Below the pieces are notes generated by a model. The model did not search any database, was not told where the DNA came from, and saw only the letters and a program-made list of their open reading frames with translations. From IMG/VR virus record IMGVR_UViG_3300044731_002337, positions 1 through 64,000 of that record: a stretch of 64,000 nucleotides of DNA. The stretch is one strand, 5' to 3'. A program made the translations under genes and the position numbers. This document shows, one piece after another, positions 1 to 64,000 of the stretch (positions are counted from its first letter, which is position 1; every line of letters starts with the position of its first letter).

Positions 1-113
1 AGTTACCTCTTCGAATGAACAATAAGAAGTTACCTCTTCGAATGAACAATAAGAAGTTACCTCTTCGAATGAACAATAAGAAGTTACCTCTTCGAATGAA
101 CAATAAGAAGTTA
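1..113 (+). repeat. Tandem array, 27-bp unit GAAGTTACCTCTTCGAATGAACAATAA, about 4 copies (truncated by window start); dispersed core family 1
   Basis: Exact 27-nt periodicity read directly (units start at 1, 28, 55, 82). Confidence 0.97.
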
Positions 114-6029: not shown

Positions 6030-6092
6030 GGTTTTTTTTTCTCATGGTGTAAAAGAATTTCCAGGGGTTAAAGGAAAGAGGTGTTTGTATAA

Positions 6093-6132
6093 TCATTCGA
6101 AGAGGCAACTTCTCGTTTAATCGAAAAGGTAA
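6093..6132 (-). repeat. Two degenerate 24-bp units of core family 1 in a divergent intergenic region
   Basis: + strand TCATTCGAAGAGGCAACTTCTCGT-TTAATCGAAAAGGTAA matches the 42.2-42.5 kb array units. Confidence 0.7.
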
Positions 6133-6176
6133 TTGTAAGAAAATAAAGTAAAAAAGAAAGAAAGAGAACAAGGTGG

Positions 6177-13000: not shown

Positions 13001-16000
13001 AGCACAATTATGTTTGGTCCCAGCATGTCTCTGTAATGCTTGTAGTATCTCGGTTTGATCAGGTCTGGGTTTCAATAGGTATACACGTTCCCAAAATGTA
13101 CGAATGGATTCATGGGGCGAAAAACGTCTCACGTAATGCTGGTCCCAATATGCAATCCAATCATCATAAATTAGACGTTGATCTATTGTATCTTTATTGA
13201 GATAATCCAACATAAATGACCCACTATATAGTAAAGGATTGATAGCGCTTACAACTTCATATACAAAGGGGCTATTTTCATTGAGGTTCATGGATAGAAC
13301 GGTGTATAGGGCAATCATATCTGTGACTGATATATTGATAAACCAGGAAAAGTCTGGTAAAAATTCAAGAATTGCAAAATGAGGGTCAATCACGATCTTG
13401 TCTCGAAGTGATGGGTCATGATGGCGATACATATCAAAACGTTTATGATGAAATAATCTGACTAATAATGCTCTTCTGTTTGGATTATCAGTGTGGAACA
13501 TGAGGCATACACTTGCAGTAGAATCATGACATGACCAGTGAAGTAGAGGATCTTTAATAACTTGATCATAATTCGTGTACCAACCATCATTTGGATTGTT
13601 GAGATGCCATCGATTCTGTATGCGGTACCAGGTATGGGAAGGAAGTTTCTGTTGTACGGAAATAAAACGAGCGGTAACTTGAGGTTCATTCGAAGAGGTA
13701 ACCTGTTGAGTAGATGTATCTTTAGTTTGAATCGAGTATCCATGTTCTCGCCATTGTGATGAATGCAAATCGAAGAATGTAATGAATTCACATACTGGTA
13801 ATGTCTTTTGATACATCCAATGTGATGTTATAGGATCCAAGGTGAGTTCAGGGTTTTCCATTGTAGTGATGGTTTGACCTGATGCTTTTATATGTAAATA
13901 GCGAAAGTGGCTGCTAGCATTACAATAGTTAATCAGTGGTTGGAATAATGTGGCGTCTTGACCTTGTAATGCGTAAATATAATAAATGAAGAGTTCTTTG
14001 TGAAAGGTTGGCGAGGTATTGAGAAATTGTTGGATGATCCAAGGTTCTGGATATTGTGGGTCTCGACATAATAGGAGGGCCAAATAATAATAGGCGAGAT
14101 TATCTTGTATATCAGGTCGAAATACGTGTTGAAGTTGTAATGTGACGCGGTAAGCTACACAGATGCCTAAATACAAGTGTAGATGTTCTGTAGGGATGGT
14201 GTGGTACTGGAGATGCCAAAAATGGTTACGTACCGTTTGGGCGTATTCGTCACGCTGTTGTAGGTTAAGTGTGGTGCAAGGTGAATGACGAAATGAAGTG
14301 ACAATGTCTCGAAATTGAATAGAGGCAAAAGAAAGATTACAGTTTAGGTTACCTTGAACGGGGATCATGATGGGTGATGTGGTAATGGTTTGGGATGGTT
14401 CCAATACAATAAAGTGTTGTATAAATTTGTCGAGCTCCTTCTTGTTTGTGGTGATGGGTTTATGTTTATGATTAATTTGGTTACGTAATTTAAAAGTAAT
14501 GAGTAAAGCGGTGAATGCATCAAGTTCAGAATGGAGTTGTAGTTTATGTTTCACGCTGAGTAGATCAGAAACCTTGGTTCGACTTTGAAAGAGTAGTTTG
14601 AGATATTGGTCTAAGGAGGCGCGTGATACCTTGGACACTACATAATTATACCATAGGAAGCCAAATGTATAATTAATCATACCGAAAATGTCAGTATTAA
14701 GATCTGGCTCGACAATGATTCTTCCTGTCAGGTAATAGGTGAGAAAACTGAACACATATGGAAATTGTTGTGCAGAAATGGTCTCTTTGGTTTGCCAGTA
14801 TAGACATGCTTCTTTACAATATTTAGCATCGATAATAAGTTTGAGATGATTATTGTATTGGTATGGCATTCGAGCGTGATTTAGCCATGGAAAGGTTTCA
14901 AATTCTTGGTTTGGAATCCAGTGAGTGTTGGTTGGAACAGTAAAGTATTCATATGCGGGATAAGAAGTATCTTTGGAATTGATATCATAATAATCAATGT
15001 GGAATGTACGAATTAATTTTTGATAAGTGTTTCGGTCGCATATTGCACCTTCTTTGCAGACGACATGTTGTAGAGCATGACCCATAGATAAGGTTTCGTT
15101 GGAGTCGATTTTGGTTGGTGCTTCGACATGTTTTTTCATGTAATTAAAAAAATCGGTAAAGTAGTGACAAACTTCTTGGAGGTGTTTTTGGTGTTGGGTG
15201 ATGAGCTGGTAGACGACATACCACAAGGTGCAATAAAAAGCGCATGTTCCTCCTAATTGGGGAGAGGCGTAAAGTCGACCTTCATGCCAGGTACATGCCA
15301 TTCTACCCATAGCATAGATGGTATAACGAGTTGGATGTTGTGGGATTTCAGGTGGAACGGTATGAAACTGTTGATACATTTCATCGGTATCATGGAATCG
15401 AATGGACTTGTCACCAGAAATGAGGAATTGTTTTAATTGGTCTTGAGATGGTTTGATGGGTTGTACAACATTGTACATGCCTTCAAGTTCATTATGGAAT
15501 TGTAATCCATCACCACTATTACATACAAACACTTGTTCACCAGGCCGAGTAAAGAGTATTGTTGCATGTCCAATCGTATTAAAAAGACGAACTGATGTAT
15601 ATGTTTCGTCTAATATATGGCAATAACTCTCGATAATTAGTTTATACATGTGCGGATCAGTACGATTAGCTAAAAAATGATAAGTCATCGCTCTGAGAAG
15701 ATCTTTGGTCATGATCTTGGTTTCACTGCCGTTACCATTTACCAATAAGTCTTGTAATGCAACTACATTCGCTAATTCTGATTGATTTAACAATAGACGG
15801 AATCGATTTAATGAGTCATACATTTCTTCGAGTGAAAGCAGCCATGGGAAATGTTCGGTAGGATGTACTTGGTATGCCCAAATATGTACCCCTAATTTGT
15901 TTACCTTTTTCATACTATGAAATTCTTTTATATCGTCATGAAGAATCAAGTTGGCGTAAGTAGTATCTACCATAACATTTACAAAGAATGGATTTTTCCA

Positions 16001-16045: not shown

Positions 16046-19000
16046 TTACATAAGAAAACTTTTGATTAGTTTTTGTTTCATAGTAGAACTGAGTCGAGAA
16101 AATAGACAACCACTTTTAGCATGCGTAACTACAAATTTGGCCATATTACGTTTTATGTTATCCTCCACATTGGGGAAATGATGAGAGACTAAATAGAAAG
16201 ATTTTTGTAATGAATCGTCTAGTAGTCCAGCTGCAAGTTTCATGGTGGTTGTTAGACGAGTAAATGTAGAGTGAGAGGAGAACATGTGTTCAATGGTACG
16301 AATCATGTGATGGGTAATAGGTTGATCTGTATATTTCTCTACAAGTTTTTTAACCTTTCTTCTTCGTTTTCGACTTTGAACTAATTCTTCTTCGTCAATG
16401 TATCCATACACATTGGTTTGGTCAAGATTGTATTTGGTCAGTGTAAGATCATGACTCATGTTATGGATGAGTATAGTCGTGACTCGAATAGTTTCTTCAG
16501 GTAGACATTCCAAAACATATTTTCGGATACGTTTTTGCATGGATGGACTGACGACAAGTTGACCGTCAATGCGATGAACTTTGGGTATTCTGGATTTGGG
16601 AATAGTATAGTAATGAGTCAAGTCTGGTTCTGGTTCAGTTTTGGATGATGATGAGGAAGAATTTATAATGATTGGTGAGGCTTTACTTACAATGGGTGGT
16701 ATCATTGTCATGGCAACTTGCGGTAATGTAATTGGTGCTTCCGCTGGTGGTGGTGGTGGTGGTGAAGCAGGTTTGAGGATAGAGGATGATGGATAGATGT
16801 ATTTATGAGTATACTCTTTTGATGTTTGGGAAATGGTATAAAAAAGTCGTTTTCGATCGGCATTCGATGAAAAGAGTATGGTGTGGCTTAAAGGGCGAGA
16901 CATATGACATAGACTTTCCATGTTTTTGAATTCGGAAGGAACAGAAATTTGTTTGGCAATTTCAGTGAGGTGTGTAGAGGTTACACTGGATAAATAAAGC
17001 ATTGTGGCAATCATGGGGTGAAAGGCTTTAGTTGACGCGGTTGGATAGATAAGATGACCTGTAGCATGAAATACCTTGTGTTTGTTAGGTAATAGTTTGC
17101 CCCATAATGTATATAATTCATCATAATGGATAATAATTGATTTAGGATAATGCTCAAGGATAAATAGATCATACCATGTTATATAATTTTCACGAACAAA
17201 TTCTTTACAATATTTGGAAAGAAAAGTATGGGGACCAAATGAAATTTCGTTGGATGAAGCATTGTAGTTGATACGCCCTTGATTATCAATATGGGTATGA
17301 TTTTGGCGAATAACACGTTTGATAGTTAGTTTTACATGATAGGTATCTATTTCTACTTCATTTTCAACTTCTTTTTCATTTTCCTTTTCCTGTTCCAATT
17401 CAAGCATAGATGCTGGTTGATCATTACAATCCTCATGCATTATTTGATAAGACTTTTTAGCAATTTTCTTGTCATTCCTTAGTAGTAATATGTCTAAATA
17501 TTTGGCGTTAGTTTGTATATCTCTGTGTTGAGCATCTCTCCAAATGGTGACTAATGAGTTGTTGGGGGTTAACGATTCGTAAGCGAAAGTAATATCATGT
17601 TCGTTAGTGGGTACATCAATACCTCGAATGCGATACATGGCTTGTACGACTTGATATTCTCGTAATGATTCATGTGTCATGAGTAGAATGCGTAGTTTTC
17701 GAGGATGTTTTATGTCTGTACCTACAATGTGGGTATGATCAAAGAAGTAAAAATATGATTTGGACATATCAAACGTATTCGAGGTTCTGGTTTCAGAATA
17801 CACATGATTTTCTGGGTACACCATAGTAATGTGTTGTGAATTAACATAGACGATAGAGCATTTCACGTGTTCATGAAGCAATTCAATGATTTCCTGTTGT
17901 GAGTGATCTTTGCAATAGCCGCACGCATCAATAAAGACGTTGTAATGTTTGAGGTCAGCCCATAGATTCGTCTTGGGTGAAATGCATCTCATCTTGTGTC
18001 GGTTAGATTCGAGAATGTGTATTACTTTGGAGTAGGATTGATCCTTGGTGACGCAGGTGACATTTAATTGAGGGCTGGAAGGGATGGCTACAGTACCGGA
18101 GAAAGCATAGACGATACCGTGTTTTTGTCGTAATATATCTACCATGGTAATATTATTGACAATGGTACTGTAATGGAGTTGTGGGAATAAACATTCGGAT
18201 GCGTAGGTGCATAAGGGATTATTCTTGTCATCACTAGGTTGAATAATGCGTAATTTGAGGCGTCGATGAGTGGTTGCTTTGAGTAGTCGTTGTTGTTCTC
18301 GAGTGAGGTGACCTTCATGTCGTAGAGCCATACAGGTAGCAATGAAATTGACATCATTGGACGAAAATTCAGAGGATTCATGTGGTATGTCCATGGCAAT
18401 ATAAGGGACAACAAATAAGGAAGCTTTAGGTCCCGTATGTCGAAATCCATACTTGACTCGATAAATCCATTGATGATGAATCGTATGTACACATGTTTTC
18501 CAATGGGTAAATAATCGTTCTTGACCTGGATCACAATATTCGGATTGTTCTGTATCCAGTAAATCATATCGTTGGGTCATGATGATTTGGGGTAATCGAT
18601 GTTGAAACCAATGTAACATTTTGGGGGAAAGTGATGTATTACAACTATAGCCTCTTTGTTCTGCTACCACTTCATTATAGTCTGATTTACAAGGCATACA
18701 GATGCTATCATATTCATCGATGATCATCATATCAGGAATGAATTCATTGGGTTTTAATTTGAGATAGAGTCTCTTGAGATCGGTATCGCTTACTACGTGT
18801 ATGACAACATGGGATTTACGTCGAGTTAAGAGTTGGTCGGTGATGCCATAACGAACAATGACCCAAGGAATAAAGTTGAATGTAATAATTTTCTGTAGGG
18901 CGTCTTTGGTTAGGTGGCGAGGTTGAACGACTACAATGTATAGGCCTTGTTGATGCAGTTGTGGTAATGTGGTGGCATTTTGTAAATAGTTGACGAGTAG

Positions 19001-25047: not shown

Positions 25048-26454
25048 ATGTCTTTTTTTGGTAAGCATTCTCCACTTAGGGTTACATGTTATGATAAACC
25101 AGTACAAATGGAGGATATGGTATCCAAAGAGGATAGTGTATTATTGCAACGTTTTTTTAGTCGATATGGGCAAGAAAGTTTTGAGGAGGAAAGGTTAAGT
25201 TTGGAGCGACTCGATTCGTATTTGGATATTCCATTAGTGCAAGTTGTGTTTACTCCATGTTATGAAGCATTACGCCGGGTAGTAGAGTTGGTGGATGGAG
25301 ATTTTATTCGTGTCATTGGATTAACGCATGGACAGGATAGTAAACAACAACAGCCGCCAGTTGAGGTGGAGGGACAAATGAAATGCTATGAGAAATTGTT
25401 TACAGAAGAGATATTGTTAGAGGCGATTGAAAAGGGAGATATGGATGTTGTGGATTTGGTGTGGAAATTAGGGTACGCGTATGATATCCAAGCATTTTAT
25501 TACACTGCTGTATCACATAAGCACGAAATGATAGCAGAGTATTTACTGGAACATGATGCACCTTTAGATCATGATGTGTTGCTGCATACGATACAAATGG
25601 GGTATCTCAAGTGTGTACAAACCATCTATTTACGAAACTCTAATTTATTTGATGACAAGTGTATGTTGACGGCAGTAACGTATAATCAGATAGCCATGAT
25701 GGATTTTGTGTATCAGATAGTTCCAGAAGTGGATATGGAATGTTTTTCGGTGGCTGTAAAAGAGGGCTTCGTAGAGGTATTGCGAAAATTATGTACCTGG
25801 AAAACTGTGAATGTATATGATATGAGAGACTTACAAAATGAGGCGATCATGTACGGGCATGTACCCATCATTGACTACTTATTGCAATTTGGGTCACATT
25901 TTATGTTACATTCATTAAACGTGGCCGCATGTCATAACGATCTAGATATGGTGCGGTTTATGTATTCTAAAGGAGTTCGACTATATCTTCATACCCATTT
26001 TTTGAGGGATCTCATGTCAAAGCCCAACTGTTTGGATGTATTGAGGGTTATTCATGAAGAGTATCATGAGCCATTAACAGAGGGAGTACTAGATGCGGCA
26101 ATACGATATTCCACGGTCGATGTTGTAAAGTTTGTACATGAAAGTGGTGTACCATTAACCTCATCATTATGGATGGAATTTCTTCAAACGTTTGACAGAG
26201 ATAATACTCATTTTTATGAATATTTGTTTGATAAGGCTTGTCCATGGCCAATTGAACTGTTTGTGGAGAAAGCATGTATCTGTGGTAGGTTATCATTGGT
26301 GAAATTTGCGATCAAACATCAGTGCCCTTATAGTCTGAACACGTGTATTGAACTGTGTAAGCGACATAAACGAAAAAAAGTGCTTGATTTTCTCTTGTCA
26401 TTATGTCCAAATTCAGGGAATATGCTTCGAAAGAGGCTATACCGAACCTGTTAA
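25048..26454 (+). CDS. Ankyrin-repeat protein with shared N-terminal YLDIP domain
   Basis: FGKHSPL..LERLDSYLDIPLV; ankyrin-like helical repeats, CPW; basic C-terminus. Confidence 0.85.
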   Translation: MSFFGKHSPLRVTCYDKPVQMEDMVSKEDSVLLQRFFSRYGQESFEEERLSLERLDSYLDIPLVQVVFTPCYEALRRVVELVDGDFIRVIGLTHGQDSKQQQPPVEVEGQMKCYEKLFTEEILLEAIEKGDMDVVDLVWKLGYAYDIQAFYYTAVSHKHEMIAEYLLEHDAPLDHDVLLHTIQMGYLKCVQTIYLRNSNLFDDKCMLTAVTYNQIAMMDFVYQIVPEVDMECFSVAVKEGFVEVLRKLCTWKTVNVYDMRDLQNEAIMYGHVPIIDYLLQFGSHFMLHSLNVAACHNDLDMVRFMYSKGVRLYLHTHFLRDLMSKPNCLDVLRVIHEEYHEPLTEGVLDAAIRYSTVDVVKFVHESGVPLTSSLWMEFLQTFDRDNTHFYEYLFDKACPWPIELFVEKACICGRLSLVKFAIKHQCPYSLNTCIELCKRHKRKKVLDFLLSLCPNSGNMLRKRLYRTC

Positions 26455-26597
26455 CCTTCTAAACTGCCAGGGGTAATGAGAAATGGTGCAATGCAGAACT
26501 TATTATTCCGTAATAAAATCTGGCGGTCATCATGGATGTCGACATTAGGAGAATCTTCCGATACATAACAACATGCGATGATCTTGAGTGAAAAACT

Positions 26598-27995
26598 ATG
26601 GAGGAGGAAATGTTATCTTATTTTGGAAACTTGTCGCCACTACATATTCAATGTGAAGACGAATCAGTTACACTTTCGGAGTTGATACAGAGTAATGAGG
26701 AAGCATTGTTGAGGGATTTTTTGAAGAATTATCAAACAAAGGATTTCAGTGCATGTAGAGCTGAGTTGGAGCATCTGGATAAGTTTTTGGACATTCCATT
26801 GGTAGAAGCTTATTTTCAACCGAGTCATGTATCTTTGCAGCGTATGGCGACCCATCACTATGGTCACAAAGTCATGCCAACTTGCGGTAACAAAGTCATT
26901 ATCCCGGAAGATTGTTTTACGGAGGACATATTGACAAATGCGATTAAGATGGGGTATGTGGAGTCGGTACAGGCTGTACATGACTATGGTTACGTCTTTG
27001 ATAATGGATTATTTCTGGAATTGGCATTGGAAAAACCTCACGAGTCAGTGGCGACATTTATGATGGGGTGTGATGGAGTTGTAATTTCGGAAAGGGCGGT
27101 AACTTTAGTCATCGAGCATGGTCTAATGCAATGTGTAACTCAATTCCCATTCGACTTTGTGTTTACAAGTGATCATTTTCGCAGTGCTGTGAAGAGTAAT
27201 CAATTGGGCATGATTGATTTCTTTCATCAACGGAACATACCGATAGGAATTCATTTGTATATGTGGATTTGCCCCGATTTACGAACAGTCATTCATATGC
27301 TAGGGTTGGGATATGAAATCAGTATTGGAGATATTGCTCGAAGTGTTCATTTCAAGAAAATAGAATTGTTACGATACATGCATGAAAAGAAGGTGTTCAA
27401 TGTGTTGGTGCATGAGATTTATCAAGCAGCAGTTCACTCTGGAGAGATAGACATTGTGAAATATTTGGTGGACATTGGTGGAACATTTCAGCCGGAGCAT
27501 ATGCGTGATGCGTTAAACTCAAACAATATTGCCATTGTGGAGTTTCTATTGGACCAACATGTGTCAATACCGCAATTAAATGGAATATTTCGGATGAAGC
27601 ATCTAATGCTAAGGTTACTACACTCAAGGGGCTATGTGTTTTCCGAACAAATGTATCAGTTTACTATGCGAGAAGGGACTGTTGAAGCAGTTCAAGTCAT
27701 GGTGGAAAATGGTTATCAGCTGACATCGAAAGTATGGGCTCTTGTGATCTATGGTAATTCGAGGGATATACTTAGGATTCTTCAATTTTTGGTGGATCAA
27801 AAATGTCCTTGGGATCCTGATGTATGTCTATATGCTATTAACAAGCGAGCATTGGATATTTTTCAATTTGTAATTGAACATGGTTGCCCTTATAGCATGG
27901 CAACATGTAAAATCTTAGCCCACGATCATCCCGAAATAATGGTCTACTTATCATCCCTCCAATCACAAAAGTTACGACTTCGCAAACGAAAATAA
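26598..27995 (+). CDS. Ankyrin-repeat protein with shared N-terminal YLDIP domain
   Basis: FGNLSPL..LEHLDKFLDIPLV; KCPWDP, EHGCPY; C-terminal LRLRKRK. Confidence 0.85.
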   Translation: MEEEMLSYFGNLSPLHIQCEDESVTLSELIQSNEEALLRDFLKNYQTKDFSACRAELEHLDKFLDIPLVEAYFQPSHVSLQRMATHHYGHKVMPTCGNKVIIPEDCFTEDILTNAIKMGYVESVQAVHDYGYVFDNGLFLELALEKPHESVATFMMGCDGVVISERAVTLVIEHGLMQCVTQFPFDFVFTSDHFRSAVKSNQLGMIDFFHQRNIPIGIHLYMWICPDLRTVIHMLGLGYEISIGDIARSVHFKKIELLRYMHEKKVFNVLVHEIYQAAVHSGEIDIVKYLVDIGGTFQPEHMRDALNSNNIAIVEFLLDQHVSIPQLNGIFRMKHLMLRLLHSRGYVFSEQMYQFTMREGTVEAVQVMVENGYQLTSKVWALVIYGNSRDILRILQFLVDQKCPWDPDVCLYAINKRALDIFQFVIEHGCPYSMATCKILAHDHPEIMVYLSSLQSQKLRLRKRK

Positions 27996-28005
27996 ATTAG
28001 AAATG

Positions 28006-28019
28006 TTTGGATTTTCTGC
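28006..28019 (+). promoter_or_regulatory. Variant promoter motif TTTGGATTTTCTGC
   Basis: One mismatch to consensus, 37 nt upstream of in-frame ATG 28056. Confidence 0.45.
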
Positions 28020-28055
28020 GTGGATCTATTGGTAATTTTTTGTATTTTGTGGGCA

Positions 28056-28499
28056 ATGTTTTTTCTACTTTCTAATAAGGGATCTTCGTCAAAGCCAAGA
28101 GCAAACCAGGCCAATTTAATTCGTCATGTAAGGTGGAAAGGTTTTGATATGAACAAGACATTGGAGTTATTACCATTTGAAATGAATGGGGAAGTAAGAC
28201 ACAGTATTTTCAAGATTGTGGCATTGGAGAATTGCTCATCGTCACATGTGCATGCCAAGGACATAATACTAGAACGTTTGGGATTATCCATGACACCAGA
28301 ATTGATCATGGAATTTTTGGAAAACAATGCCCATCCATGTGAAGGATGTGTTGAGTACATGATCTTGATGTTACGAGATCCAGAGACATGTTATTCCATT
28401 TTTTTGGAACATGGACATGAAGAGGCGGCTTTACGAACATTACATATCCATCAATGTGATGTAAAGCCTTCCTCATTTGAAAGGATTTTTCAGTCATAA
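28056..28499 (+). CDS. Intronless member of the Cys/His module family
   Basis: CSSSHVHAKDIILERL..PCEGCVEYMILMLRDP aligns with exon modules of 24075 and 44196 genes. Confidence 0.7.
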   Translation: MFFLLSNKGSSSKPRANQANLIRHVRWKGFDMNKTLELLPFEMNGEVRHSIFKIVALENCSSSHVHAKDIILERLGLSMTPELIMEFLENNAHPCEGCVEYMILMLRDPETCYSIFLEHGHEEAALRTLHIHQCDVKPSSFERIFQS

Positions 28500-28506
28500 A
28501 ACATGT

Positions 28507-29373
28507 TTATTTTTCTATGATGAGTGATAATTTAAGTATGGAACGTAGAACATCACGGGTGTATAATGGATGACAAGTAAAAGGGTTTGGTTGACGATTA
28601 AATACGAGAAAGGGTATCCATCCACAATAACTTGAGAAATGACGAATGAAATGAATGGATTCTTGTAGTTTTTCCTTGACTACATTTTCTAATGGGGACA
28701 TAAACTGCAATTAAAGTTGGATAAATAATAAAAATAATAATAATACCATGTTTTCTACATTTTTGAATTCGAGTCTTGGTGAAGCTCCCATAGAGAGAAG
28801 GGTATTGACGTATTTTCGTGACATGGGATCTCTAATCGCTAGTTCAAGTGGCGTTCCATCCAGAGAGGGGCAATTCAAGTCCATGTTCGGTATTTGTAAG
28901 GCGATTGGAACCAATGCATAGAATTTGGAAAAAAGTGCGGTAGTTAACAGGTTATGTCCCTAATGTAACTAAGTTTTGGTTGTTCATCAGTATAAATTTA
29001 CCATGTAGCCTTTGAGATGTGGGTTGGCGTTGTAATGTAGAAGTAGGTGAATGATAGAGAGACGTGTAGTAATAAACTCTGGATATCGACTGGTTAGGTT
29101 GGCAGCAAGTAAAAGTGGAGTTAGTTGTCGAGTATCCTTGGCGTCGACATTTGCATTATGAGATAGTAATTCCGTAACTGTATGGAGATGATTGGTAATG
29201 ACAGCAGCATGTAAAGGTGTTCTTTGAAGGTTTGTGCCAGGAGGTTCAAATATTCCAACATGCATTTGATCATTCCATTGGATACATTGATCATTGGTAA
29301 AATTCACATTGGCACCCAAATGGAGGAAATGGGTGATTGATTCTCCTTTCGCAATGTTCAAATATAGATCCAT
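28507..29373 (-). CDS. Spliced ankyrin-repeat protein, complement(join(28507..28704,28747..28959,29002..29373)), 260 aa
   Basis: Two 42-nt phase-0 GT..AG introns; TPLHAA, TPLLLAA, GTPLELA ankyrin motifs; C-terminal HPLYTRDVLRSILKLS. Confidence 0.85.
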
Positions 29374-29418
29374 GACAATATATACAGGTTATTTATGTAA
29401 AGTAGTACATCGGATTAT

Positions 29419-30120
29419 TTATTGTTCATCGAGAATGAGATGACGTTTGTCTGGACCGGGAATAAGTTTGGTAATGTCTGGTGTGTTGGGTGGACATTTA
29501 TTGTCACAGCAGATGAGAAGAGTGGATTTGCGACGAAGATGGTTATGTATACGTTTGACAAAGTCAATACATGACCATTGTTGTTCAGGAGTGAGAGTAG
29601 GTAGAAACCAATAGACTTGTACTTGTCGAGAGTATTCCGCAAATTGTGTGGCACCATGTTCAAGCTGACTATCGTTAACTTTGGTAAGGGAAATAGTTAG
29701 GTGATGAACGTGAATGTATTTCATCATGGTGATAAATCGTATCCACTGTATGGTTCGATCCCAAGAAAGGTACCAAATACCAGGCGTTGGCTCTCGTATC
29801 AGGGTCATGAACTGCTGTTGCCATGGTTGGGGTTTCTCAATGTAGCCCGCCAAATCATGGAAACAATACATGGGCATATTAGGACTTGTATAAGGGCCTT
29901 CAATACATATCTTTTGAGTAGTGAGCGGCATAAAGTAACGACATGCATATTCGTCTGTACGTCTAGTATTCCATGATAGATTATGACGTGTTCCAGCATA
30001 GACAACTCGAATATCATTTGCTTCCACTTGATATATCCACATCGCTGTGTTTGACTCCAACCATTGCCGTATCATCTTATGAGACGAATCCTTGTGAAGA
30101 TGACAAGTATAATAATACAT
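29419..30120 (-). CDS. Hypothetical protein resembling a degenerate CRESS-virus (nano-like) Rep
   Basis: Ordered similarity: YYYTCH (motif I), WLESNTAMWIYQVE, IEGPYT, PWQQQF, LLICCDNKCP; HUH, catalytic YxxK and Walker A not intact. Confidence 0.45.
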   Translation of the reverse strand: MYYYTCHLHKDSSHKMIRQWLESNTAMWIYQVEANDIRVVYAGTRHNLSWNTRRTDEYACRYFMPLTTQKICIEGPYTSPNMPMYCFHDLAGYIEKPQPWQQQFMTLIREPTPGIWYLSWDRTIQWIRFITMMKYIHVHHLTISLTKVNDSQLEHGATQFAEYSRQVQVYWFLPTLTPEQQWSCIDFVKRIHNHLRRKSTLLICCDNKCPPNTPDITKLIPGPDKRHLILDEQ

Positions 30121-30178
30121 TCTTATGATACAATAATTTGTATGAATGAAAAGTATACAAATCGGATTATTATTATTA

Positions 30179-30811
30179 TTATTTATATGAAGAGAGTTTC
30201 ATAATGGATCGAAGAATATCTCTTGTATACAATGGATGTTCAATCTTTTTGCTCCATATCAATAATGGTATGCATAACTCTTCTGTCATGACTTGTTTCT
30301 GTAGATAAATAAATGAGGATAAATACACACATTAATATATACCATGAGAGCAATAGTGGAATGACAGGAATAATTTTGAGCAACATCTAAAGGGGTTTTG
30401 TGCTGTATTAAAACCAAAAAGAAAAGAAAGATTATGGGATGATGAGGTGACAATGTTACATTATGTGGGGTGGTTGAAAATGGGTTGGCTTTGTAATGTA
30501 GGAGACGTTTGATGATGTCGATGTGACCCATACTGCATGCATCATGTAATACGGTATATCCATCCATATAGCTGGAATGAACATTCGCCTTGTGTTCAAG
30601 TAATATGTCGACGCAAAGTACAGAGTTATACCGAACAGCTACTCGTAACGAACCATCATCTGGCTGAAATGATTTTGTAATGATTTATTTTTATTCAATA
30701 TGAATGTACCTTGATTCCTTGGTTAAGTAGAGCAAATAGAGTATATATATTATTGGTGCGTGCAGCATAGTGCAATAATGTTTCTCCTGGTTGTTGTTGT
30801 TGTTGGTTCAT
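30179..30811 (-). CDS. Spliced ankyrin-repeat protein, complement(join(30179..30298,30343..30402,30460..30663,30710..30811)), 161 aa
   Basis: Three phase-0 introns of 46, 57 and 44 nt; GETLLHYAA, GYTVLHDAC, KTPLDVA; C-terminal HPLYTRDILRSIMKLS shared with 28507 gene. Confidence 0.85.
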
Positions 30812-30834
30812 TTTTTGGGAAAGAAAAGAGTTAT

Positions 30835-31326
30835 TTATCGGACAAAAGGGGCGATGACGAGGTAAAGAAACCAAAAGTAGATGATGAAGGAGAATGGGAA
30901 TGGTAAATGAGCTACGGTCCCATGATGAAGTGGAATAAGGTTGGAAGTGTTCCATGGAATAGTATACCAACAAGGTTGAAGGGTTGAAATATTCGATTCG
31001 GTAGTCTCCAACGTAGCAAATGCATTGGTATGATTAAATGGTGAAAAGCGTGGGCGTAATAGTTCCACTTCATACACGGATACATTGTAATGAGATCGTT
31101 CACAGATTTGTTGACGTAACGAGCGTTTACAGCATTTACCATCATGTTGCATGGTATAGCATTCCGGGAGATGGCATTCAGTAATTGGAAAGCAGTACAT
31201 CGTGTAGTAATGTTTGTAAACTCGAGTTACTTTCGTGGAATGAACATGGCATTGATCTTGGTATTGCCATAAGTATTGGGCGCTGAGTAAGAGAATGGCG
31301 GAAACAAAAAACTTGGTAAGGATCAT
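30835..31326 (-). CDS. Cys-rich membrane protein with hydrophobic segments at both ends
   Basis: 163-aa ORF, N- and C-terminal hydrophobic segments. Confidence 0.65.
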   Translation of the reverse strand: MILTKFFVSAILLLSAQYLWQYQDQCHVHSTKVTRVYKHYYTMYCFPITECHLPECYTMQHDGKCCKRSLRQQICERSHYNVSVYEVELLRPRFSPFNHTNAFATLETTESNISTLQPCWYTIPWNTSNLIPLHHGTVAHLPFPFSFIIYFWFLYLVIAPFVR

Positions 31327-31341
31327 GTTGTGTGATGGGGA

Positions 31342-32820
31342 TCAATGGGAGGTTGGATCGGGGATATTAGGACAAAATGGAATTCGGGAGGCATGATAAA
31401 ACATATGACATGTTCCATCACATTGGAAACCATTCTCATGAATATATTGGAGCATGGCAAAATGATTGCGTTGTGCAGCAAGTTGTTTCTTGGGCCATGA
31501 ACAACCTAAACTTTGTAAATAACGTACGACTTTCATTTGATTATTGTTAATGGCTTGTTCTAGTAGACTATAATGGGGCGATTGTAATCCTAAGCGAGTA
31601 CAAATATCAGTGTGTCCACGAGCTAATAAGCCGGAATACGATATGTAATTGATGGGTGCTTTCCGTCCATTATCAATGTGTGTCATGGTATCATCTGAAG
31701 TAACAAAAGGATGAGATTCCAAGTAGGTGATTAAATGTTCACAATGAGGTAATGAGGAAATGCCCATCAAGTCATTCCAACGCCATGATTTTAGGTTACC
31801 GCAGGTTTGCATGACAGTGTTACCGCAGGTTTGCATGACAGTGTTACCGCAGGTTTGCATGACGTTGTTACCGCAGGTTTGCATGACATTGTTACCATGT
31901 GAAAGTAAATGCTTAATCATTTCGTGTCGCGGCTCATCATGGGAAAATAATCGTTTGACAAATTCTTCATTAATCATTCTGGGTGTCCATAAATGAATAA
32001 ATAAATCAATGACGTTATATTGTATAGCATTGTGAATGTAAATGTGGGTATACTCTTGGAAACGGTTCGGCTGTGTGGGATACATTTCTTCGTAGTGGTC
32101 TCTGAAAAATTGGTAAACACCAAGTGAGGTAATGTGTTGTGCAATAGTTTTGAATTCTTGTTCTATAGTATCATTGTACCCATTCAAAGTGCCAAGGTTA
32201 CTCTTCATGAACTTGAGCATTTCCAGACTATTATGTTTAGCCGCTTCCACATAGCAGTTAAATGTGAATGGTTGACTTTCAGGTTGAAAAGGGAGTAGCT
32301 TGCAAAGAATAGTCATGTCATTGGCACGGACACAATATTTCATATCAATGTGTAATTGACCATGATGATCGATGACGAATTGAATCATGTCTATATTTCG
32401 ATGATGAATGGCATATTGTACTACCGAATTATCCCAGAAACATCCTTTTTCATATGCTTTTTGGAGAGTATCTACATGATTCCTGGCGGCGGCTTCACGA
32501 CAAAAATCAACCTGTTCCAAGTTGTATGGTGGGAAAATGGTGCATTGATTGTGAACAAGACGGTGAAACGCGGCGTAAGAGGTGGGGTTGAGGTATGATT
32601 CTACAAAGGGGATATCCAAGTATTTATCTAATGCTTCTAATGCTTTTCGTTCATGATGTACATTGCGACCACTAAACAGATCGAGTAATAGTTCTTTATG
32701 AGTAGGATTAAACGAAATCAAGTCATCTAGAGTAGTGGTGGTATCTATACATTGTACTCCTAGAGGTGTGTGATTACCAAATTCGAGTGTAACATGATGA
32801 ATACAAATAGTAAAGACCAT
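31342..32820 (-). CDS. Ankyrin-repeat protein with shared N-terminal YLDIP domain and internal GNxVMQTC repeats
   Basis: FGNHTPL..LEALDKYLDIPFV; EKGCFWD, LGCSWP. Confidence 0.82.
   Translation of the reverse strand: MVFTICIHHVTLEFGNHTPLGVQCIDTTTTLDDLISFNPTHKELLLDLFSGRNVHHERKALEALDKYLDIPFVESYLNPTSYAAFHRLVHNQCTIFPPYNLEQVDFCREAAARNHVDTLQKAYEKGCFWDNSVVQYAIHHRNIDMIQFVIDHHGQLHIDMKYCVRANDMTILCKLLPFQPESQPFTFNCYVEAAKHNSLEMLKFMKSNLGTLNGYNDTIEQEFKTIAQHITSLGVYQFFRDHYEEMYPTQPNRFQEYTHIYIHNAIQYNVIDLFIHLWTPRMINEEFVKRLFSHDEPRHEMIKHLLSHGNNVMQTCGNNVMQTCGNTVMQTCGNTVMQTCGNLKSWRWNDLMGISSLPHCEHLITYLESHPFVTSDDTMTHIDNGRKAPINYISYSGLLARGHTDICTRLGLQSPHYSLLEQAINNNQMKVVRYLQSLGCSWPKKQLAAQRNHFAMLQYIHENGFQCDGTCHMFYHASRIPFCPNIPDPTSH
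31795..31896 (-). repeat. Tandem 24-bp unit GGTAACAMYGTCATGCAAACCTGC x4 (family 2), in frame
   Basis: 24-nt periodicity; encodes GN(N/T)VMQTC. Confidence 0.95.
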
Positions 32821-33315: not shown

Positions 33316-33630
33316 ATGGATCCAAACTTAATGGTGGAATTGTTGAAAAGTACTAGTATATTATATGAGACATGTATCGAATTCCACTTTGCAGATTATT
33401 CCGTAAGATATTCGTATGAGGATGTAAGAAAGATTTTGAGGTGTTTGAAACATATTCAGTGTGAACAGATTGCAATGAAGCATTCGGTGGTAGGATATAA
33501 TATTTTATTAATTTCATCAGTAATTGTGAAGCATGATATGGAATTTGCTAAACCTTTAAATTGTTTACAAAAGTTATTTTCTTCCGAGTCATCCCATTTA
33601 ACTCGATTGTTTATGGATCCATCGTATTGA
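33316..33630 (+). CDS. Hypothetical protein
   Basis: 104-aa ORF filling the gap; start uncertain. Confidence 0.45.
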   Translation: MDPNLMVELLKSTSILYETCIEFHFADYSVRYSYEDVRKILRCLKHIQCEQIAMKHSVVGYNILLISSVIVKHDMEFAKPLNCLQKLFSSESSHLTRLFMDPSY

Positions 33631-34171: not shown

Positions 34172-34229
34172 GTAGATTTTTTTTTGGAATTCATAAACTA
34201 GAAAAAGAAAAAAAAACAGTAGAGTGATC

Positions 34230-40768: not shown

Positions 40769-41584
40769 GTGGAAAAAATCAAAATGTGGTTAACACTTGC
40801 TCATGTCTACGGTATTTTACTTATGCCAAATCAATGGATTAGTTTTGTAGTGGTACTACTGAATGCATGGATGATTAGGACCCCCTATTTGTGTTTTGTA
40901 AATTGTGTGTTGAATATGGTTGGTAACATGTCATGGTGCGGTGTAGTATTTTCAATGCTATGGTTATTGGATTCTCAAAATTTGGTCATTGGTGAGTTAC
41001 CTGGGAAATTTAGAAAAGAGGTCGAATACATTGTAAGTGTAAGTAAAGATTTGAAACCAGATAATTCAGAGATTTTTTGGACGAGTGTATTTGCAGATAA
41101 TGGTCAGACAACCAATATTCCTTACTCTCAAGGGCTATATGATTACATATCTGGTTTACGGTGGCAAATCATGGAGTTTTGGTGTAAGCGAATTAATGGG
41201 TTTGGTACGCTCATCAATCCATCCAATTCAGTAGAACAAGATTGGCATATTGATTATACATGGTCATACACAAGTCTATTTATACCCATTGAAAATTGTA
41301 CATCATCCAACATGACTCAGATTATGACAAGTTCAATTGTATGGGGATATTTCCATAATTCACGTAATATCAAAGAAAAAGAACAAGAGAATGTTATGGC
41401 CACCATCATTGTACCAAGGAAATGGTCATTGTTGTTATTGCCACCAAGTACATTTCACCGTGGCGTAAAGAACAACTCTGATATGGATCGAACATTGTTT
41501 TGGATATCCTATCAGAGTCGAACCGATCCAATCGAACATGAACATGCAGTGCAAGACTTTACCAAGAAATCAATAGACTTGTGA
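40769..41584 (+). CDS. Membrane-anchored 2OG-Fe(II) dioxygenase-like (PhyH-like) protein
   Basis: QDWHID (HxD), FHRGVKNNSDMDRT (distal His and Arg); hydrophobic N-terminus. Confidence 0.6.
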   Translation: MEKIKMWLTLAHVYGILLMPNQWISFVVVLLNAWMIRTPYLCFVNCVLNMVGNMSWCGVVFSMLWLLDSQNLVIGELPGKFRKEVEYIVSVSKDLKPDNSEIFWTSVFADNGQTTNIPYSQGLYDYISGLRWQIMEFWCKRINGFGTLINPSNSVEQDWHIDYTWSYTSLFIPIENCTSSNMTQIMTSSIVWGYFHNSRNIKEKEQENVMATIIVPRKWSLLLLPPSTFHRGVKNNSDMDRTLFWISYQSRTDPIEHEHAVQDFTKKSIDL

Positions 41585-41675
41585 CGCTAGTTCATTCAAA
41601 GAGGTAACGCTAGTTCATTCAAAGAGGTAACGCTAGTTCATTCAAAGAGGTAACGCTAGTTCATTCAAAGAGGTA
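41584..41675 (-). repeat. Tandem array, 23-bp unit (+ strand ACGCTAGTTCATTCAAAGAGGTA) x4, core family 1
   Basis: Exact 23-nt periodicity, intergenic between convergent genes. Confidence 0.97.
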
Positions 41676-41700
41676 GTAAAAAGGTCATGATGAAAATATT

Positions 41701-42501
41701 TTATTTTTCAATAGGAAAAAAAATAGGCATTACAATTTTTGCTTTCACTGAAGGACAAGAACGAGGTTGCGGGGTTGGTTTTCTTTGTTTCTTGAGTGGG
41801 GCTAGTGAAAAATCAGAAGAGGAGTTGTCTTGCCTTGATCTTTTTCTTGGTAAGGCATAGAATAGAGCAGTTTCACCATTCTTGTTTCGAAGGTTCACAT
41901 CGGCCCCATAGTTAACCAGAAACTTGATTCCAATTCCCGAGTTTTTCTCAGAAGCACACATGAGAAGAGAACAGCCATCATTCTTGTCCGAGACTGAATT
42001 GATATCGCACTTGGCCGTCTTGATCAACCAATCAAACATGTCCACATCCATTGAGTGAAAATTATGATTCATCACTTTGAAAAAAACAGCAAACAAGATG
42101 AAATAACCCAATTCGTTTTCTTGGGTCAGCACCTCAGGCTTCTTCACAATCAACTCCTTCAACTCATAGTATTGCCCTTGTGCAAGCAACTCAAATGGAT
42201 CGGTAACCTCAGTTTCATTCAAAGAGGTAACTTTTGATTCATTCGAAGAGGTAACTTCTGGTTCAATCGAAGAGGTAACTTCTGGTTCAATCGAAGAGGT
42301 AACTTTTGGTTCAATCGAAGAGGTAACTTCTGGTTTAATCGAAGAGGTAACTTTTGGTTCAATCGAAGAGGTAACTTTTGGTTCAATCGAAGAGGTAACT
42401 TTTGGTTCAATCGAAGAGGTAACTTCTGGTTCATTCGAAGAGGTAACTTTTGGTTCAATCGAAGAGGTAACTTCTGGTTCATTCGAAGAGGTGGTAGACA
42501 T
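41701..42501 (-). CDS. Ankyrin-repeat protein with N-terminal (VTSSI/NEP[E/K])x12 repeat tract
   Basis: GCSLLMCAS..LVNYGADVNLRNKNGETALFYA. Confidence 0.8.
   Translation of the reverse strand: MSTTSSNEPEVTSSIEPKVTSSNEPEVTSSIEPKVTSSIEPKVTSSIEPKVTSSIKPEVTSSIEPKVTSSIEPEVTSSIEPEVTSSNESKVTSLNETEVTDPFELLAQGQYYELKELIVKKPEVLTQENELGYFILFAVFFKVMNHNFHSMDVDMFDWLIKTAKCDINSVSDKNDGCSLLMCASEKNSGIGIKFLVNYGADVNLRNKNGETALFYALPRKRSRQDNSSSDFSLAPLKKQRKPTPQPRSCPSVKAKIVMPIFFPIEK
42202..42493 (-). repeat. Tandem array, 24-bp unit x12, core family 1, in frame
   Basis: 24-nt periodicity with variant units. Confidence 0.97.
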
Positions 42502-44245: not shown

Positions 44246-44527
44246 AAAAAAAGTTTATTCCGATTCCAAATGTTGTTATTTGTTCAGATCTCATGTGTCT
44301 CACATCACCATTTTTATTCCCCTATTATCGACATGAAGAACCTTTTTTATTCCAATTGAAAATACTTCTTGCCAAATAAAATACTTTTTCATCACAAGAA
44401 GAACATTTTTATTCCAACAGAAAACACTTTTTACCTCTTTTGCAAAATAAAAAACTTTTTCTGATAATTGAAAACTTTTTCGTCTCTTTTATCAACATGG
44501 AAAGCGTTTGATAATTAGGAGTTTGTA

Positions 44528-44702
44528 GTTCATTCGAAGAGGTAACTTCTTGTTCATTCGAAGAGGTAACTTCTTGTTCATTCGAAGAGGTAACTTCTTG
44601 TTCATTCGAAGAGGTAACTTCTGGTTCATTCGAAGAGGTAACTTCTGGTTCATTCGAAGAGGTAACTTCTGGTTCATTCGAAGAGGTAACTTCTTGTTCA
44701 TT
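44528..44702 (-). repeat. Tandem array, 24-bp unit GAAGTTACCTCTTCGAATGAAC(A/C)A x7, core family 1, probably non-coding
   Basis: 24-nt periodicity in a ~500-bp divergent intergenic region. Confidence 0.97.
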
Positions 44703-44739
44703 TGGAAAATAAATCAAGTCGACGAAAATAAAAATATAC

Positions 44740-63097: not shown

Positions 63098-64000
63098 TTT
63101 GCCTACAAGACTTGAAATAAAAAGTAATCCATAAATTGGTAAAATGGTCCATAAATAACTATTGTCCGTGTGGATTGGCTTTGCACCTTGTTCATTCGTA
63201 GAGGTATTATAATCATTCGTAGAGGTATCTTGTAGTTTCTTACGACGACGAGGTAGTGGGTTTTGATTATTCGTAGAGGTATCTTGTGGTCTTTGAACAG
63301 AATTTGGTCTTGTTTGTGGTCTGTTGTTGTCGTCAAGCCTTGTTTGTGGTGCATGAGAATCACGTTCAATCACCTTCATATCCTTTTCTGCAATTCTCTG
63401 TTCTATGGCGAAGATTTTGGTAAATTCTTCGAAAAAAATGGTATAATTAGAACTTTTTTTGTTCAAATCTGAGTAGATAATGGTGTCAAAGTAGTTGGAA
63501 TACTGTTCAAGCATTTCCCTAATGATTCTCGCCATGAGTGCGCGGTATCTATCTTGTCGTTCTATTTTGCCATCAAACCAAGCAAATGCGCCACATCCAA
63601 TAGGACCAATAAAAAAATGTTTTGTACGTCGTGCTATAGCGGTGAGAAATATGGTAGTCCACATATCGACAATAGCCCATCTCGTTTCCTGTGTAACACA
63701 GCCTTTTTGGCGTTCGTCAAATTGACCCATTTTCACAACATAATCGATATAAGGTTTTTTATCATGAGCGAAGCATGGTGCAGCTGCAGCAATCATGGGT
63801 AGTTTCATAATAGGGTTTTCCGGATCTAAATGAAGGTGAGTCTTGTTTTTACCTTGGTATTCATACTTTCCATATACAGTCACATTAGGACTTACAATAC
63901 ATCTTTTAAAAGGAATAAACTTACGACTATTTGCATACACTGCCTTTTCAAAGTCTTGTTCATGATACAGTCCTTCACGCTGAATAAACTCTTTAGCGTT
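63086..64000 (-). CDS. Bacterial-type PARG/macrodomain-like (TIGR02452/DUF2263-like) protein, 5' partial, C-terminal membrane anchor
   Basis: [22 protein letters not shown]; frame open to the window end; hydrophobic C-terminus. Confidence 0.6.
63191..63281 (-). repeat. Three degenerate core-family-1 units (TACCTCTACGAATRA), in frame (TSTN[E/D/N])
   Basis: + strand ATTCGTAGAGGTA occurs three times; first spacing 21 nt. Confidence 0.7.

What the first reader, a model, noticed from the sequence alone, without database searches (positions are those of the whole stretch)
26862..31896. Second 24-bp unit shared by two genes at non-equivalent positions, also jointed at GGTAAC
GGTAACAMYGTCATGCAAACCTGC occurs x4 at 31795-31896 (about residue 310-340, GNxVMQTC). 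About 1.6 copies occur at 26862-26900 (GHKVMPTCGNKV, about residue 90) of another ankyrin paralogue. The 18-nt body differs from family 1, but the unit length and the GGTAAC junction are the same. This hints at one mechanism acting at GGTAAC sites.
Basis: partly seen in the sequence, partly recalled or inferred. Interest (0 to 1): 0.6.

Follow-up and report, generated by a model that had tools for sequence, protein, structure and literature searches.

The report
Dispersed 24-bp repeat modules inside giant-virus genes
An uncultivated lake giant virus carries a family of 24-base repeat modules, all joined at GGTAAC, that have been copied into many unrelated genes in different reading frames and vary in copy number between strains, so they behave as DNA-level mobile minisatellites and not as protein motifs.

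Summary
At 31795-31896 (minus strand) four 24-bp units plus a closing GGTAAC encode GNxVMQTC x4 in an ankyrin paralogue. At 26862-26900, 1.6 degenerate units form a 12-residue insertion in another paralogue, at a non-homologous position. The window is the first 64 kb of a 295-kb giant-virus (NCLDV) contig from lake metagenomes.

Genome-wide there are about 66 units at about 20 loci. There are three bodies (F1, F2, F3) and one 21-bp F2/F1 hybrid, all starting with GGTAAC. Most arrays are (GGTAAC-N18)n-GGTAAC, and mixed F1/F2 arrays switch at GGTAAC.

The same DNA unit is read in three different frames or orientations in different genes. Periods of 23 and 25 bp occur only outside ORFs. Orthologues and paralogues show the arrays are insertions. 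Other assemblies show 4/2/1, 3/2 and 2/1 copies. A related virus (genes 66-70% identical in nucleotides) carries F2 units that are 92-100% identical, in other genes.

Best reading: a lineage-specific, selfish, coding-tolerant minisatellite family. It is seeded by GTAAC-anchored copy-paste (inferred), expanded by slippage, and filtered for open frames. No transposase, nuclease or reverse transcriptase was found, units form no hairpins, and free GGTAAC sites are at chance level.

The parts
31795..31896 (-). F2 array: four 24-bp units (GGTAAC + AAT/AAC/ACT/ACT + constant 15 nt) plus a closing GGTAAC. Read as GNxVMQTC x4.
31342..32820 (-). Ankyrin-repeat paralogue (492 aa) carrying the F2 array at residues 309-342. 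The array starts at the glycine of an ANK LLxxG motif.
26862..26900 (+). Degenerate F2 relic, 1.58 units. It forms a 12-residue insertion (HHYGHKVMPTCG) before the conserved N-x-x-x-I-I-P.
26598..27995 (+). Ankyrin-repeat paralogue (465 aa) carrying the F2 relic at residues 89-101.
25048..26454 (+). Ankyrin-repeat paralogue (468 aa) without either unit. Used as a comparison copy.
1..113 (-). F1 array with a 27-bp period, 4.2 copies, at the very start of the contig. The assembly breaks inside it.
13673..13702 (+). Solitary F1 unit flanked by GGTAAC on both sides. It lies antisense in the 1997-aa ORF 10034-16027(-), is read as VTSSNEPQVT, and is absent from paralogue 16046-22060(-).
41584..41677 (+). 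F1 array with a 23-bp period, 4.0 copies. Intergenic, with no open frame across it.
42202..42495 (+). F1 array, 24 bp x about 12, antisense in ORF 41701-42501(-). Read as VTSS[NI]EP[EK].
44528..44702 (+). F1 array, 24 bp x 7.3, antisense in ORF 44409-44741(-). Read as VTSSNE[PQ]E.
6092..6133 (+). Degenerate F1 relic of about 1.5 units, outside long ORFs.
63191..63229 (+). Two diverged F1-like copies, antisense in ORF 63086-64435(-). Read as [13 protein letters not shown].
16698..16721 (+). Possible decayed F2-like unit inside ORF 16046-22060(-). Weak.

Best explanation
The 24-bp unit in the two ankyrin genes belongs to a lineage-specific family of modular minisatellites in an uncultivated freshwater giant virus (NCLDV).

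Structure: each module is GGTAAC, then a short variable zone (3 nt in F2; 4-8 nt in F1), then a constant body of 12-15 nt. There are three bodies (F1, F2, F3).

Shown: modules are joined head to tail at GGTAAC, giving arrays of the form (GGTAAC-N18)n-GGTAAC. They lie at about 20 loci, in both orientations. Where an orthologue or paralogue exists for comparison, they are insertions. They change copy number between strains. They are nearly identical in a related virus at different loci.

Inferred: a new locus is seeded by a DNA-level copy-paste event, most simply a double template switch or gene conversion during recombination-dependent replication, anchored on GTAAC microhomology. Arrays then grow and shrink by replication slippage. 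Selection removes arrays that break genes. Inside ORFs this leaves only periods divisible by three, and stop-free, fairly hydrophilic registers. The same DNA therefore yields GNxVMQTC, VTSSCKPA or VTAGVHDx (F2), and VTSSNEPE, LPLRMNEK or VTSGSFEE (F1). The constant body and GGTAAC stay conserved because only units that keep them continue to be copied (selfish persistence), or because a factor binds them.
For: Dispersed families: TRF on the whole 294,773-bp record and a fuzzy core search give 66 units, 60 of them in this record and 6 in the relative's contigs L018 and L019 (F1 with periods 21, 23, 24, 25 and 27; F2 with 24; F3 with 23).

Frames: translations of every host ORF show three registers or orientations used per family. 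Arrays of period 23, 25 and 23 have no open frame across them, while all eight arrays inside ORFs have period 24 (Fisher P 0.006-0.018).

Insertions:
- The solitary F1 unit is a 10-residue gap in paralogue 16046-22060.
- ANK site 1 is a 12-residue insertion.
- The L019 ORF is 42% identical to its G000 orthologue 193337-193918, which has a 19-residue gap exactly at L019's F2 array. The empty site reads ATTACG-TAC where the filled site reads GTTACC-TAC.
- The L018 ORF compared with G000 33611-34231 shows a 13-residue gap.
- The array in the two-TM protein lies in a loop that the syntenic L026 homologue lacks.

Phase: boundary statistics. Switches are in phase at GGTAAC in the mixed arrays 175315-175554 and 266472-266566 and in the adjacent F2+F1 pair at 140419-140463. 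One hybrid is joined at the shared TCAT.

Copy-number variation: 4/2/1 units (P0013/P0014/P0015), 3/2 (P0019/P0020), 2/1 (P0025/P0026).

Conservation: units are 92-95% identical between viruses, with one identical 24-mer, against 66-70% for genes.

Identical 24-mers, including the variable zone, are shared between distant loci (72851 and 293601; 42418, 44613 and 175477).

The virus is real and recurrent: lake metagenomes from 11 studies hold it.
Against: The seeding step was not observed. Only one empty site is close enough to read at the DNA level, and it matches GTTACC at 4 of 6 positions. Free GGTAAC sites are neither enriched nor depleted. No enzyme candidate was found, although the record is estimated only 55% complete. 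Near-identity of units between two diverged viruses is hard to explain by neutral selfish turnover alone, and would also fit a selected DNA function or exchange during co-infection. The copy-number differences come from short-read assemblies, which can collapse repeats. Logan contigs break inside the array, so reads could not confirm n = 4.
Confidence: 0.55

Rival explanations
1. The units are cis-acting DNA signals kept by selection, for example iterons or binding sites for a viral DNA-binding protein (replication, packaging or enhancer elements like baculovirus hrs). They happen to be tolerated inside genes.
For: The constant body plus GGTAAC (19-21 bp) has the size of a protein-binding site. 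It is 92-100% conserved between viruses whose genes are 66-70% identical. Conservation is independent of reading frame and holds in intergenic arrays. The units are tandem and dispersed over the genome.
Against: Most units lie inside ORFs, and they are not enriched between genes. There is no dyad symmetry or fold: z-scores range from -0.4 to +2.2. Copy number varies freely between strains, down to one unit. Loci differ between the two related viruses. This reading would still need a copy-paste process to explain the spread.
Confidence: 0.15
2. This is an enzyme-driven mobile element. A sequence-specific nuclease, nickase or recombinase (viral, host or virophage-borne) cuts at or next to GGTAAC, and repair copies units from another array (homing-like). 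Alternatively, a templated polymerase adds units at GGTAAC ends.
For: There is strict phase at GGTAAC at array ends and at F1/F2 joints, also in non-coding arrays. The variable zone lies immediately 3' of GGTAAC in all families. The left boundary often lacks the first G, while all internal copies have it. This fits a defined cut or join point.
Against: No GIY-YIG, HNH_3, TnpB, Y1 transposase, resolvase or RVT_1 domain was found in the 295 kb. About 19 free GGTAAC sites per 64 kb are unoccupied and at the chance level. The units have no terminal inverted repeats or hairpins for a transposase to hold.
Confidence: 0.15
3. The repeats are protein-level motifs: 8-residue peptides selected for a function such as Cys-spaced or Ser/Thr-rich linkers, moved between genes by ordinary recombination.
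For: V-T-S-S appears in several readings (VTSSNEPE, VTSSCKPA). Arrays sit in linkers, loops and termini. The most hydrophobic open registers (GNFWFIRR, QVCMTMLP) are not used in long ORFs.
Against: The same DNA is read in three registers and both orientations, giving unrelated peptides. Variation is not concentrated at third codon positions. Intergenic arrays of period 23 and 25 keep GGTAAC and the body without coding.
Confidence: 0.07
4. The arrays are assembly artefacts or chimeric joins at low-complexity sequence.
For: The contig starts inside an array. Logan contigs break inside the 31795 array, and fragments from other F2 loci pile up there.
Against: Array-bearing proteins occur identically or with unit-number variants in JGI, NCBI, ENA and Logan assemblies. 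ORFs stay open across the arrays. A different virus carries the same units.
Confidence: 0.02

Closest known systems
Hypervariable minisatellites with a shared core (Jeffreys-type) and bacterial dispersed VNTR families such as mycobacterial MIRUs (own knowledge)
   Same: Head-to-tail units of tens of bases at many loci. Several unit families share a short core. Copy number is polymorphic between strains. Variant repeats are interspersed within one array.
   Different: Here the host is a giant virus. Most arrays lie inside protein-coding genes and are translated in several frames. The core sits exactly at the array boundaries and at joints between families.
Rickettsia palindromic elements (RPE): selfish repeats inserted in frame in protein genes (own knowledge; mentioned in PMC1779305 and PMC10969869)
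   Same: A DNA-level repeat family inserted within ORFs without breaking them, adding peptide segments to unrelated proteins. Present or absent between related genomes.
   Different: RPEs are 100-150 bp, palindromic, single-copy insertions. These units are 21-27 bp, are not palindromic, and form tandem arrays of 1-12 copies and mosaic arrays.
Mosaic extragenic repeats of bacteria (BIMEs/REP) and mobile GC clusters or double-hairpin elements of fungal mitochondria (own knowledge)
   Same: Short modules combined in mosaic arrays. Some GC clusters and double-hairpin elements sit in frame inside genes.
   Different: Those elements rely on hairpins or palindromes and are mostly extragenic. No hairpin is found here, and the composition is ordinary (about 40% GC).
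Baculovirus / WSSV homologous regions (hrs) and iridovirus tandem repeats (own knowledge; DIV-1 repeats in PMC5873915)
   Same: Dispersed tandem repeat clusters in a large DNA virus genome. Tandem repeats occur in coding and non-coding regions of lake-dwelling large DNA viruses.
   Different: hrs are intergenic, have palindromic cores and are longer. No shared 6-bp joint or multi-frame coding use has been described for them, to my knowledge.

Membership tests
Minisatellite / VNTR family with shared core | Head-to-tail tandem units of about 10-100 bp | tested here: met
   TRF finds periods 21-27, 1-12 copies, 94-100% matches.
Minisatellite / VNTR family with shared core | Copy number polymorphic between individuals or strains | tested here: met
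   4/2/1, 3/2 and 2/1 units in proteins from other assemblies, two of them with extra substitutions. Caveat: these are short-read assemblies.
Minisatellite / VNTR family with shared core | Different unit families share a short core | tested here: met
   F1, F2 and F3 all carry GGTAAC. 11 of 49 arrays carry it against 0.6 expected.
MITE / RPE-type in-frame selfish element | Terminal inverted repeats or a palindromic, hairpin-forming sequence | tested here: not met
   ssDNA folds of F1, F2 and mixed arrays have z-scores from -0.42 to +2.2.
MITE / RPE-type in-frame selfish element | Insertion inside ORFs that keeps the frame open, and is absent from orthologues | tested here: met
   Five filled/empty comparisons. 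ORFs stay open across the arrays.
MITE / RPE-type in-frame selfish element | Target-site duplication | tested here: inconclusive
   Arrays are flanked by (G)GTAAC on both sides. The only readable empty site has ATTACG where the filled site has GTTACC. The sequences are too diverged to decide.
IS200/IS605-type insertion at TTAC | Y1 HUH transposase or TnpB present, and subterminal hairpins | tested here: not met
   PF01797 and PF07282 give no match in the 295 kb. There are no hairpins. The record is only about 55% complete.
Protein-level peptide repeat (ankyrin-associated or other) | Same reading frame and peptide at all occurrences | tested here: not met
   Three registers or orientations are used per family. 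Pfam sees only ANK repeats beside the array.
hr-like replication/enhancer repeats of large DNA viruses | Intergenic location with imperfect palindromic core | tested here: not met
   Most arrays are inside ORFs, and there is no dyad. Function was not testable.
Homing-endonuclease-driven element | Associated endonuclease gene | tested here: not met
   No GIY-YIG or HNH_3 was found. A Hint domain exists only inside the RNR large subunit. Other nuclease families were not searched.

The most novel reading that the evidence does not exclude
A dedicated, sequence-anchored copying process writes 8-codon cassettes into viral genes. An example would be nicking or priming at GTAAC, followed by templated synthesis from another array or from a small template. 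This would be a new kind of mobile element, without a transposase-type structure, that giant viruses use or tolerate to diversify proteins. Its constant body would be kept because it is the recognition site.
Probability: 0.15. Interest if true: 0.85.

Novelty: new variant of a known kind. Interest (0 to 1): 0.6.

Why it matters
If the reading holds, short non-palindromic minisatellite modules can spread between genes of a giant virus and be expressed in several reading frames. This would be a cheap source of new linker or loop peptides, and of strain-level protein length variation, in ankyrin paralogues, a kinase-like protein, membrane proteins and a 2000-residue protein.

It extends the 'selfish DNA inside protein-coding genes' phenomenon, known from Rickettsia RPEs, to eukaryotic large DNA viruses and to tandem arrays.

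It also gives practical VNTR markers for tracking this virus in lakes. The GGTAAC-phased joints make a concrete, testable case for microhomology-anchored template switching in viral factories.

Tried and rejected
- Exact and degenerate scans of IMG/VR for the F2 core and the F1 core found nothing. A looser F1 pattern gave six single hits in unrelated contigs with no similarity to this genome. That is the number expected by chance, so they were rejected.
- Laying Logan contigs of four lake runs on 26500-32400 could not confirm the copy number, because contigs end inside the array. It only showed that the virus recurs and that site 1 is identical in three runs.
- Hairpin or cruciform idea: rejected by the folds.
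- Tiny-intron idea (GT...AG within F1): rejected, because F2 contains no AG and the arrays are read through in long ORFs (by inspection).
- Type IIS restriction-site coincidences (ACCTGC, GAAGAG) gave no consistent cut position relative to GGTAAC (by inspection only).
- Variable triplets do not match the right-flank bases of the arrays (by inspection).
- Capsid Pfam PF04451 gave no hit in the record. The virus was placed among NCLDV by Rpb1, Rpb2, PolB, RNR and a D5-like helicase instead.
- A word search for homologues of the 492-aa ankyrin paralogue found none in the 270-860 aa range, so no orthologue could show its empty site.
- The whole record behind relative L026 is not held, so its repeats could be checked only in 22.9 kb. 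That stretch has no F1, F2 or F3 units.
- Literature searches for giant-virus mobile or in-frame tandem repeats, and for GGTAAC repeats, found no description of such a family.
Full report
**What is at the coordinates.** TRF reports 31795-31896 as a 24-bp repeat, 4.2 copies, 96% matches. Read on the minus strand, it is four units of GGTAAC + AAT/AAC/ACT/ACT + a constant 15 nt, closed by a fifth GGTAAC. It lies in ORF 31342-32820(-), a 492-aa protein with ankyrin repeats, and encodes GNxVMQTC four times at residues 309-342. At 26862-26900(+) one unit with three mismatches is followed by 14 perfect bases of a second (1.58 copies). This is residues 89-101 of ORF 26598-27995(+), a 465-aa ankyrin paralogue. 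With up to 3 mismatches the 21-nt core occurs 5 times in the window against 0.00 in shuffles.

**The two sites are not homologous.** The genome has six paralogues of this family. In their alignment (A2), four copies run directly from '...RL..' into N-Q-C-T-I-I-P. The 26598 gene has 12 extra residues (HHYGHKVMPTCG) there. The array in the 31342 gene starts about 220 residues later, at the glycine of an ANK 'LLxxG' motif. No orthologue of the 492-aa protein was found in the 270-860 aa range.

**What the genome is.** The window is bases 1-64000 of a single 294,773-bp IMG/VR record. The record is linear and estimated 55% complete. It encodes Rpb1, Rpb2, family-B DNA polymerase, ribonucleotide reductase with a Hint domain, and a D5-like helicase, so it is an NCLDV. 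Its PolB is at most 60-64% identical to anything else held. Lake-water metagenomes from 11 studies contain it.

**The unit is one member of a dispersed, modular family.** Whole-record TRF and fuzzy searches find 66 units: 60 at about 20 loci in this record and 6 in the relative's contigs L018 and L019.
- F1 is GGTAAC + 4-8 variable nt + a constant body of about 13 nt. Periods are 24 (30 units), 23, 25 and 27.
- F2 is the unit of this finding, period 24 (23 units).
- F3 has period 23, at 288808.
- One 21-bp unit has an F2 head and an F1 tail, joined at their shared TCAT.
- F1 and F2 alternate as a 48-bp higher-order repeat at 175315-175554. They abut at 266472-266566 and 140419-140463. Every switch is at GGTAAC.
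- F2 and F3 also share ATGCAA at nearly the same offset. The bodies are therefore probably diverged relatives and not unrelated sequences.

- Of 49 non-redundant arrays with period 9 or more, 11 carry GGTAAC in the unit against 0.6 expected from composition. 24 is the modal period, in 8 arrays.
- Local alignment of 17 loci to their own tandem consensus puts the array start at phase -1 to +2 of GGTAAC in 13 of 17 (binomial P about 9e-8).
- It puts the array end 4-8 nt into the unit, just after GGTAAC, in 11 of 16 (P about 5e-5).
- The general form is (GGTAAC-N18)n-GGTAAC. Five left boundaries lack the first G, while every internal and right-hand copy keeps the G that precedes GTAAC.
- GGTAAC as such is not special outside units. 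55 sites occur in the window against 19.2 expected, but 36 of them are inside units, leaving 19.

**DNA-level, not protein-level.** The same unit is translated differently in different genes:
- F2 as GNxVMQTC in the two ANK genes and in 223265-224134.
- F2 as VTSSCKPA in 219553-219984 and 174764-175783.
- F2 on the opposite strand as VTAGVHDx in 230216-231397 and 265554-267113.
- F1 as VTSSNEPE in four genes, as LPLRMNEK in 72820-73545, and as VTSGSFEE in 174764-175783.

Each family has four stop-free registers, and three are in use. The two unused ones are the most hydrophobic. Arrays with periods 23, 25 and 23 have no open frame and lie between genes, whereas all eight multi-unit arrays inside long ORFs have period 24. 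That is the signature of a DNA repeat filtered by selection on the host genes.

**They are insertions.**
1. The solitary F1 unit at 13673-13702 corresponds to a 10-residue gap in the adjacent 43%-identical paralogue.
2. ANK site 1 is described above.
3. A metagenome scan found F2 arrays in two contigs, L018 and L019, of a related virus. Its genes are 66-70% identical in nucleotides to this one. The L019 ORF is the 42%-identical orthologue of 193337-193918(-). The present genome has a 19-residue gap exactly where L019 has three F2 units. The empty site reads ATTACG-TAC against GTTACC-TAC at the filled one.
4. The L018 ORF reads GNNVMQTC twice where its homologue 33611-34231(-) has a 13-residue gap.
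5. The array in the 143-aa two-TM protein sits in the loop between the helices. The syntenic homologue in L026, a relative with 64% PolB identity, has no such loop.

**They are dynamic and unusually conserved.**
- Proteins in the same 90% clusters from other assemblies differ by whole units: 4, 2 and 1 units of LPLRMNEK; 3 and 2 of VTSSCKPA; 2 and 1 of VTAGVHDY. Two of these variants also carry point substitutions, so they come from other strains.
- A strain variant of the finding's own array keeps four units but changes one variable codon (P0007).
- F2 units in the related virus are 92-95% identical to those here. One 24-mer is identical (266525 here, twice in L019), far above the 66-70% of the surrounding genes.
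- Identical 24-mers, variable zone included, link distant loci within the genome (72851 with 293601; 42418, 44613 and 175477).

**Mechanism.** Shown: modular units, GGTAAC-phased boundaries and joints, insertion status, multi-frame use, copy-number change, and cross-virus conservation at non-orthologous loci.

Inferred: new loci arise by copy-paste anchored on GTAAC microhomology, for example a double template switch or gene conversion during replication. Arrays then expand and contract by slippage. Selection keeps only arrays that leave the host frame open.

I found no enzyme to drive this. There is no GIY-YIG, HNH_3, TnpB, Y1 transposase, resolvase or RVT_1 in the 295 kb. The units do not fold, so they are not MITE- or RPE-like in structure.

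Two readings remain open rivals. In one, a sequence-specific enzyme acts at GGTAAC. In the other, the constant block is a selected binding site. The high conservation between viruses is the main observation that the simple selfish-slippage picture does not explain well.

**Comparison with known systems.** Functionally the family behaves like minisatellite or VNTR families with a shared core, and like in-frame selfish repeats (Rickettsia RPEs). It fails the structural definition of MITEs and RPEs, having no palindrome. It also fails the definition of hr-type viral repeats, being neither intergenic nor palindromic. Full-text searches found no description of such a family in giant viruses. I rate it a new variant of a known kind.

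**Limits.**
- The copy number of the 31795 array rests on the source assembly, because Logan contigs end inside it.
- Host ORFs are mechanical calls, though nine of the ten looked up are gene calls in public collections.
- Only one empty site is readable at the DNA level.
- The host is unknown.

Noticed in passing
whole record G000 (window = bases 1-64000); switch near 282,536: Strong strand asymmetry that does not depend on gene direction. The record has G 66,006 against C 46,128. At four-fold sites, + strand genes have GC skew +0.24, and - strand genes have -0.52 on their coding strand. Cumulative skew peaks sharply at about 282.5 kb, and the last 12 kb are reversed. The relative L026 shows the same sign in the syntenic orientation. 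This suggests very asymmetric (unidirectional or strand-displacement-like) replication, with an origin or terminus near 282.5 kb.
   Followed up: partly
L006:508-1830 (-) = G000 160508-161830, and 161884-161965: A 440-aa protein made of about 15 ten-residue LPxKEE(L/I)xxx repeats (30-bp units). Its coding strand reads a TTTACCTTCGAAGGAAG-type string that resembles F1 antisense. An F1 array of period 25 sits just upstream of its ATG, and a solitary F1 unit lies inside it. This may be the source of F1.
   Followed up: no
window 10034-16027 (-) and 16046-22060 (-): Two adjacent paralogues of about 2000 aa, 43% identical, with weak DUF3638/DUF3645 P-loop matches. Function unknown.
   Followed up: partly
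window 1352-4123 (+) and 57600-60902 (-): Two large proteins end in a Peptidase_S74 (endosialidase chaperone) domain. One also has a legume-lectin-like domain. This looks like fibre or tail-spike-style self-cleaving assembly modules in a giant virus.
   Followed up: no
L005:6780-10124 (-) = G000 146780-150124: The ribonucleotide reductase large subunit (1114 aa) has a weak Hint-domain match (residues 307-354, below Pfam's cut-off) between its N-terminal domain and its barrel domain. Probably an intein.
   Followed up: no
G000 about 211-217 kb (genes listed): Kinesin motor, ATG8-like, LicD and PIF1-type helicase genes lie next to the DNA polymerase. These are eukaryote-like cytoskeleton and autophagy genes in this virus.
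   Followed up: no
G000 143975-144631: A 650-bp AT-rich non-coding block of nested 22/31/50/72/106-bp repeats (TTTTATCCAAATGAAAAAACA-type units), unrelated to the GGTAAC families. It could be a promoter array or a replication element.
   Followed up: no
L018:979-1511 vs G000 178025-178534: A 533-bp stretch is 90% identical between the two viruses, against a 66-70% background. L018 is also rearranged relative to G000, with pieces matching 178 kb, 43 kb and 64 kb. This hints at recent exchange or a conserved element.
   Followed up: no
window 28987-31326 (-): Several short overlapping ORFs with ankyrin-like sequence (for example 28987-29373 and 30286-30567) lie between the two paralogues. They may be fragments of decayed ankyrin genes.
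   Followed up: no
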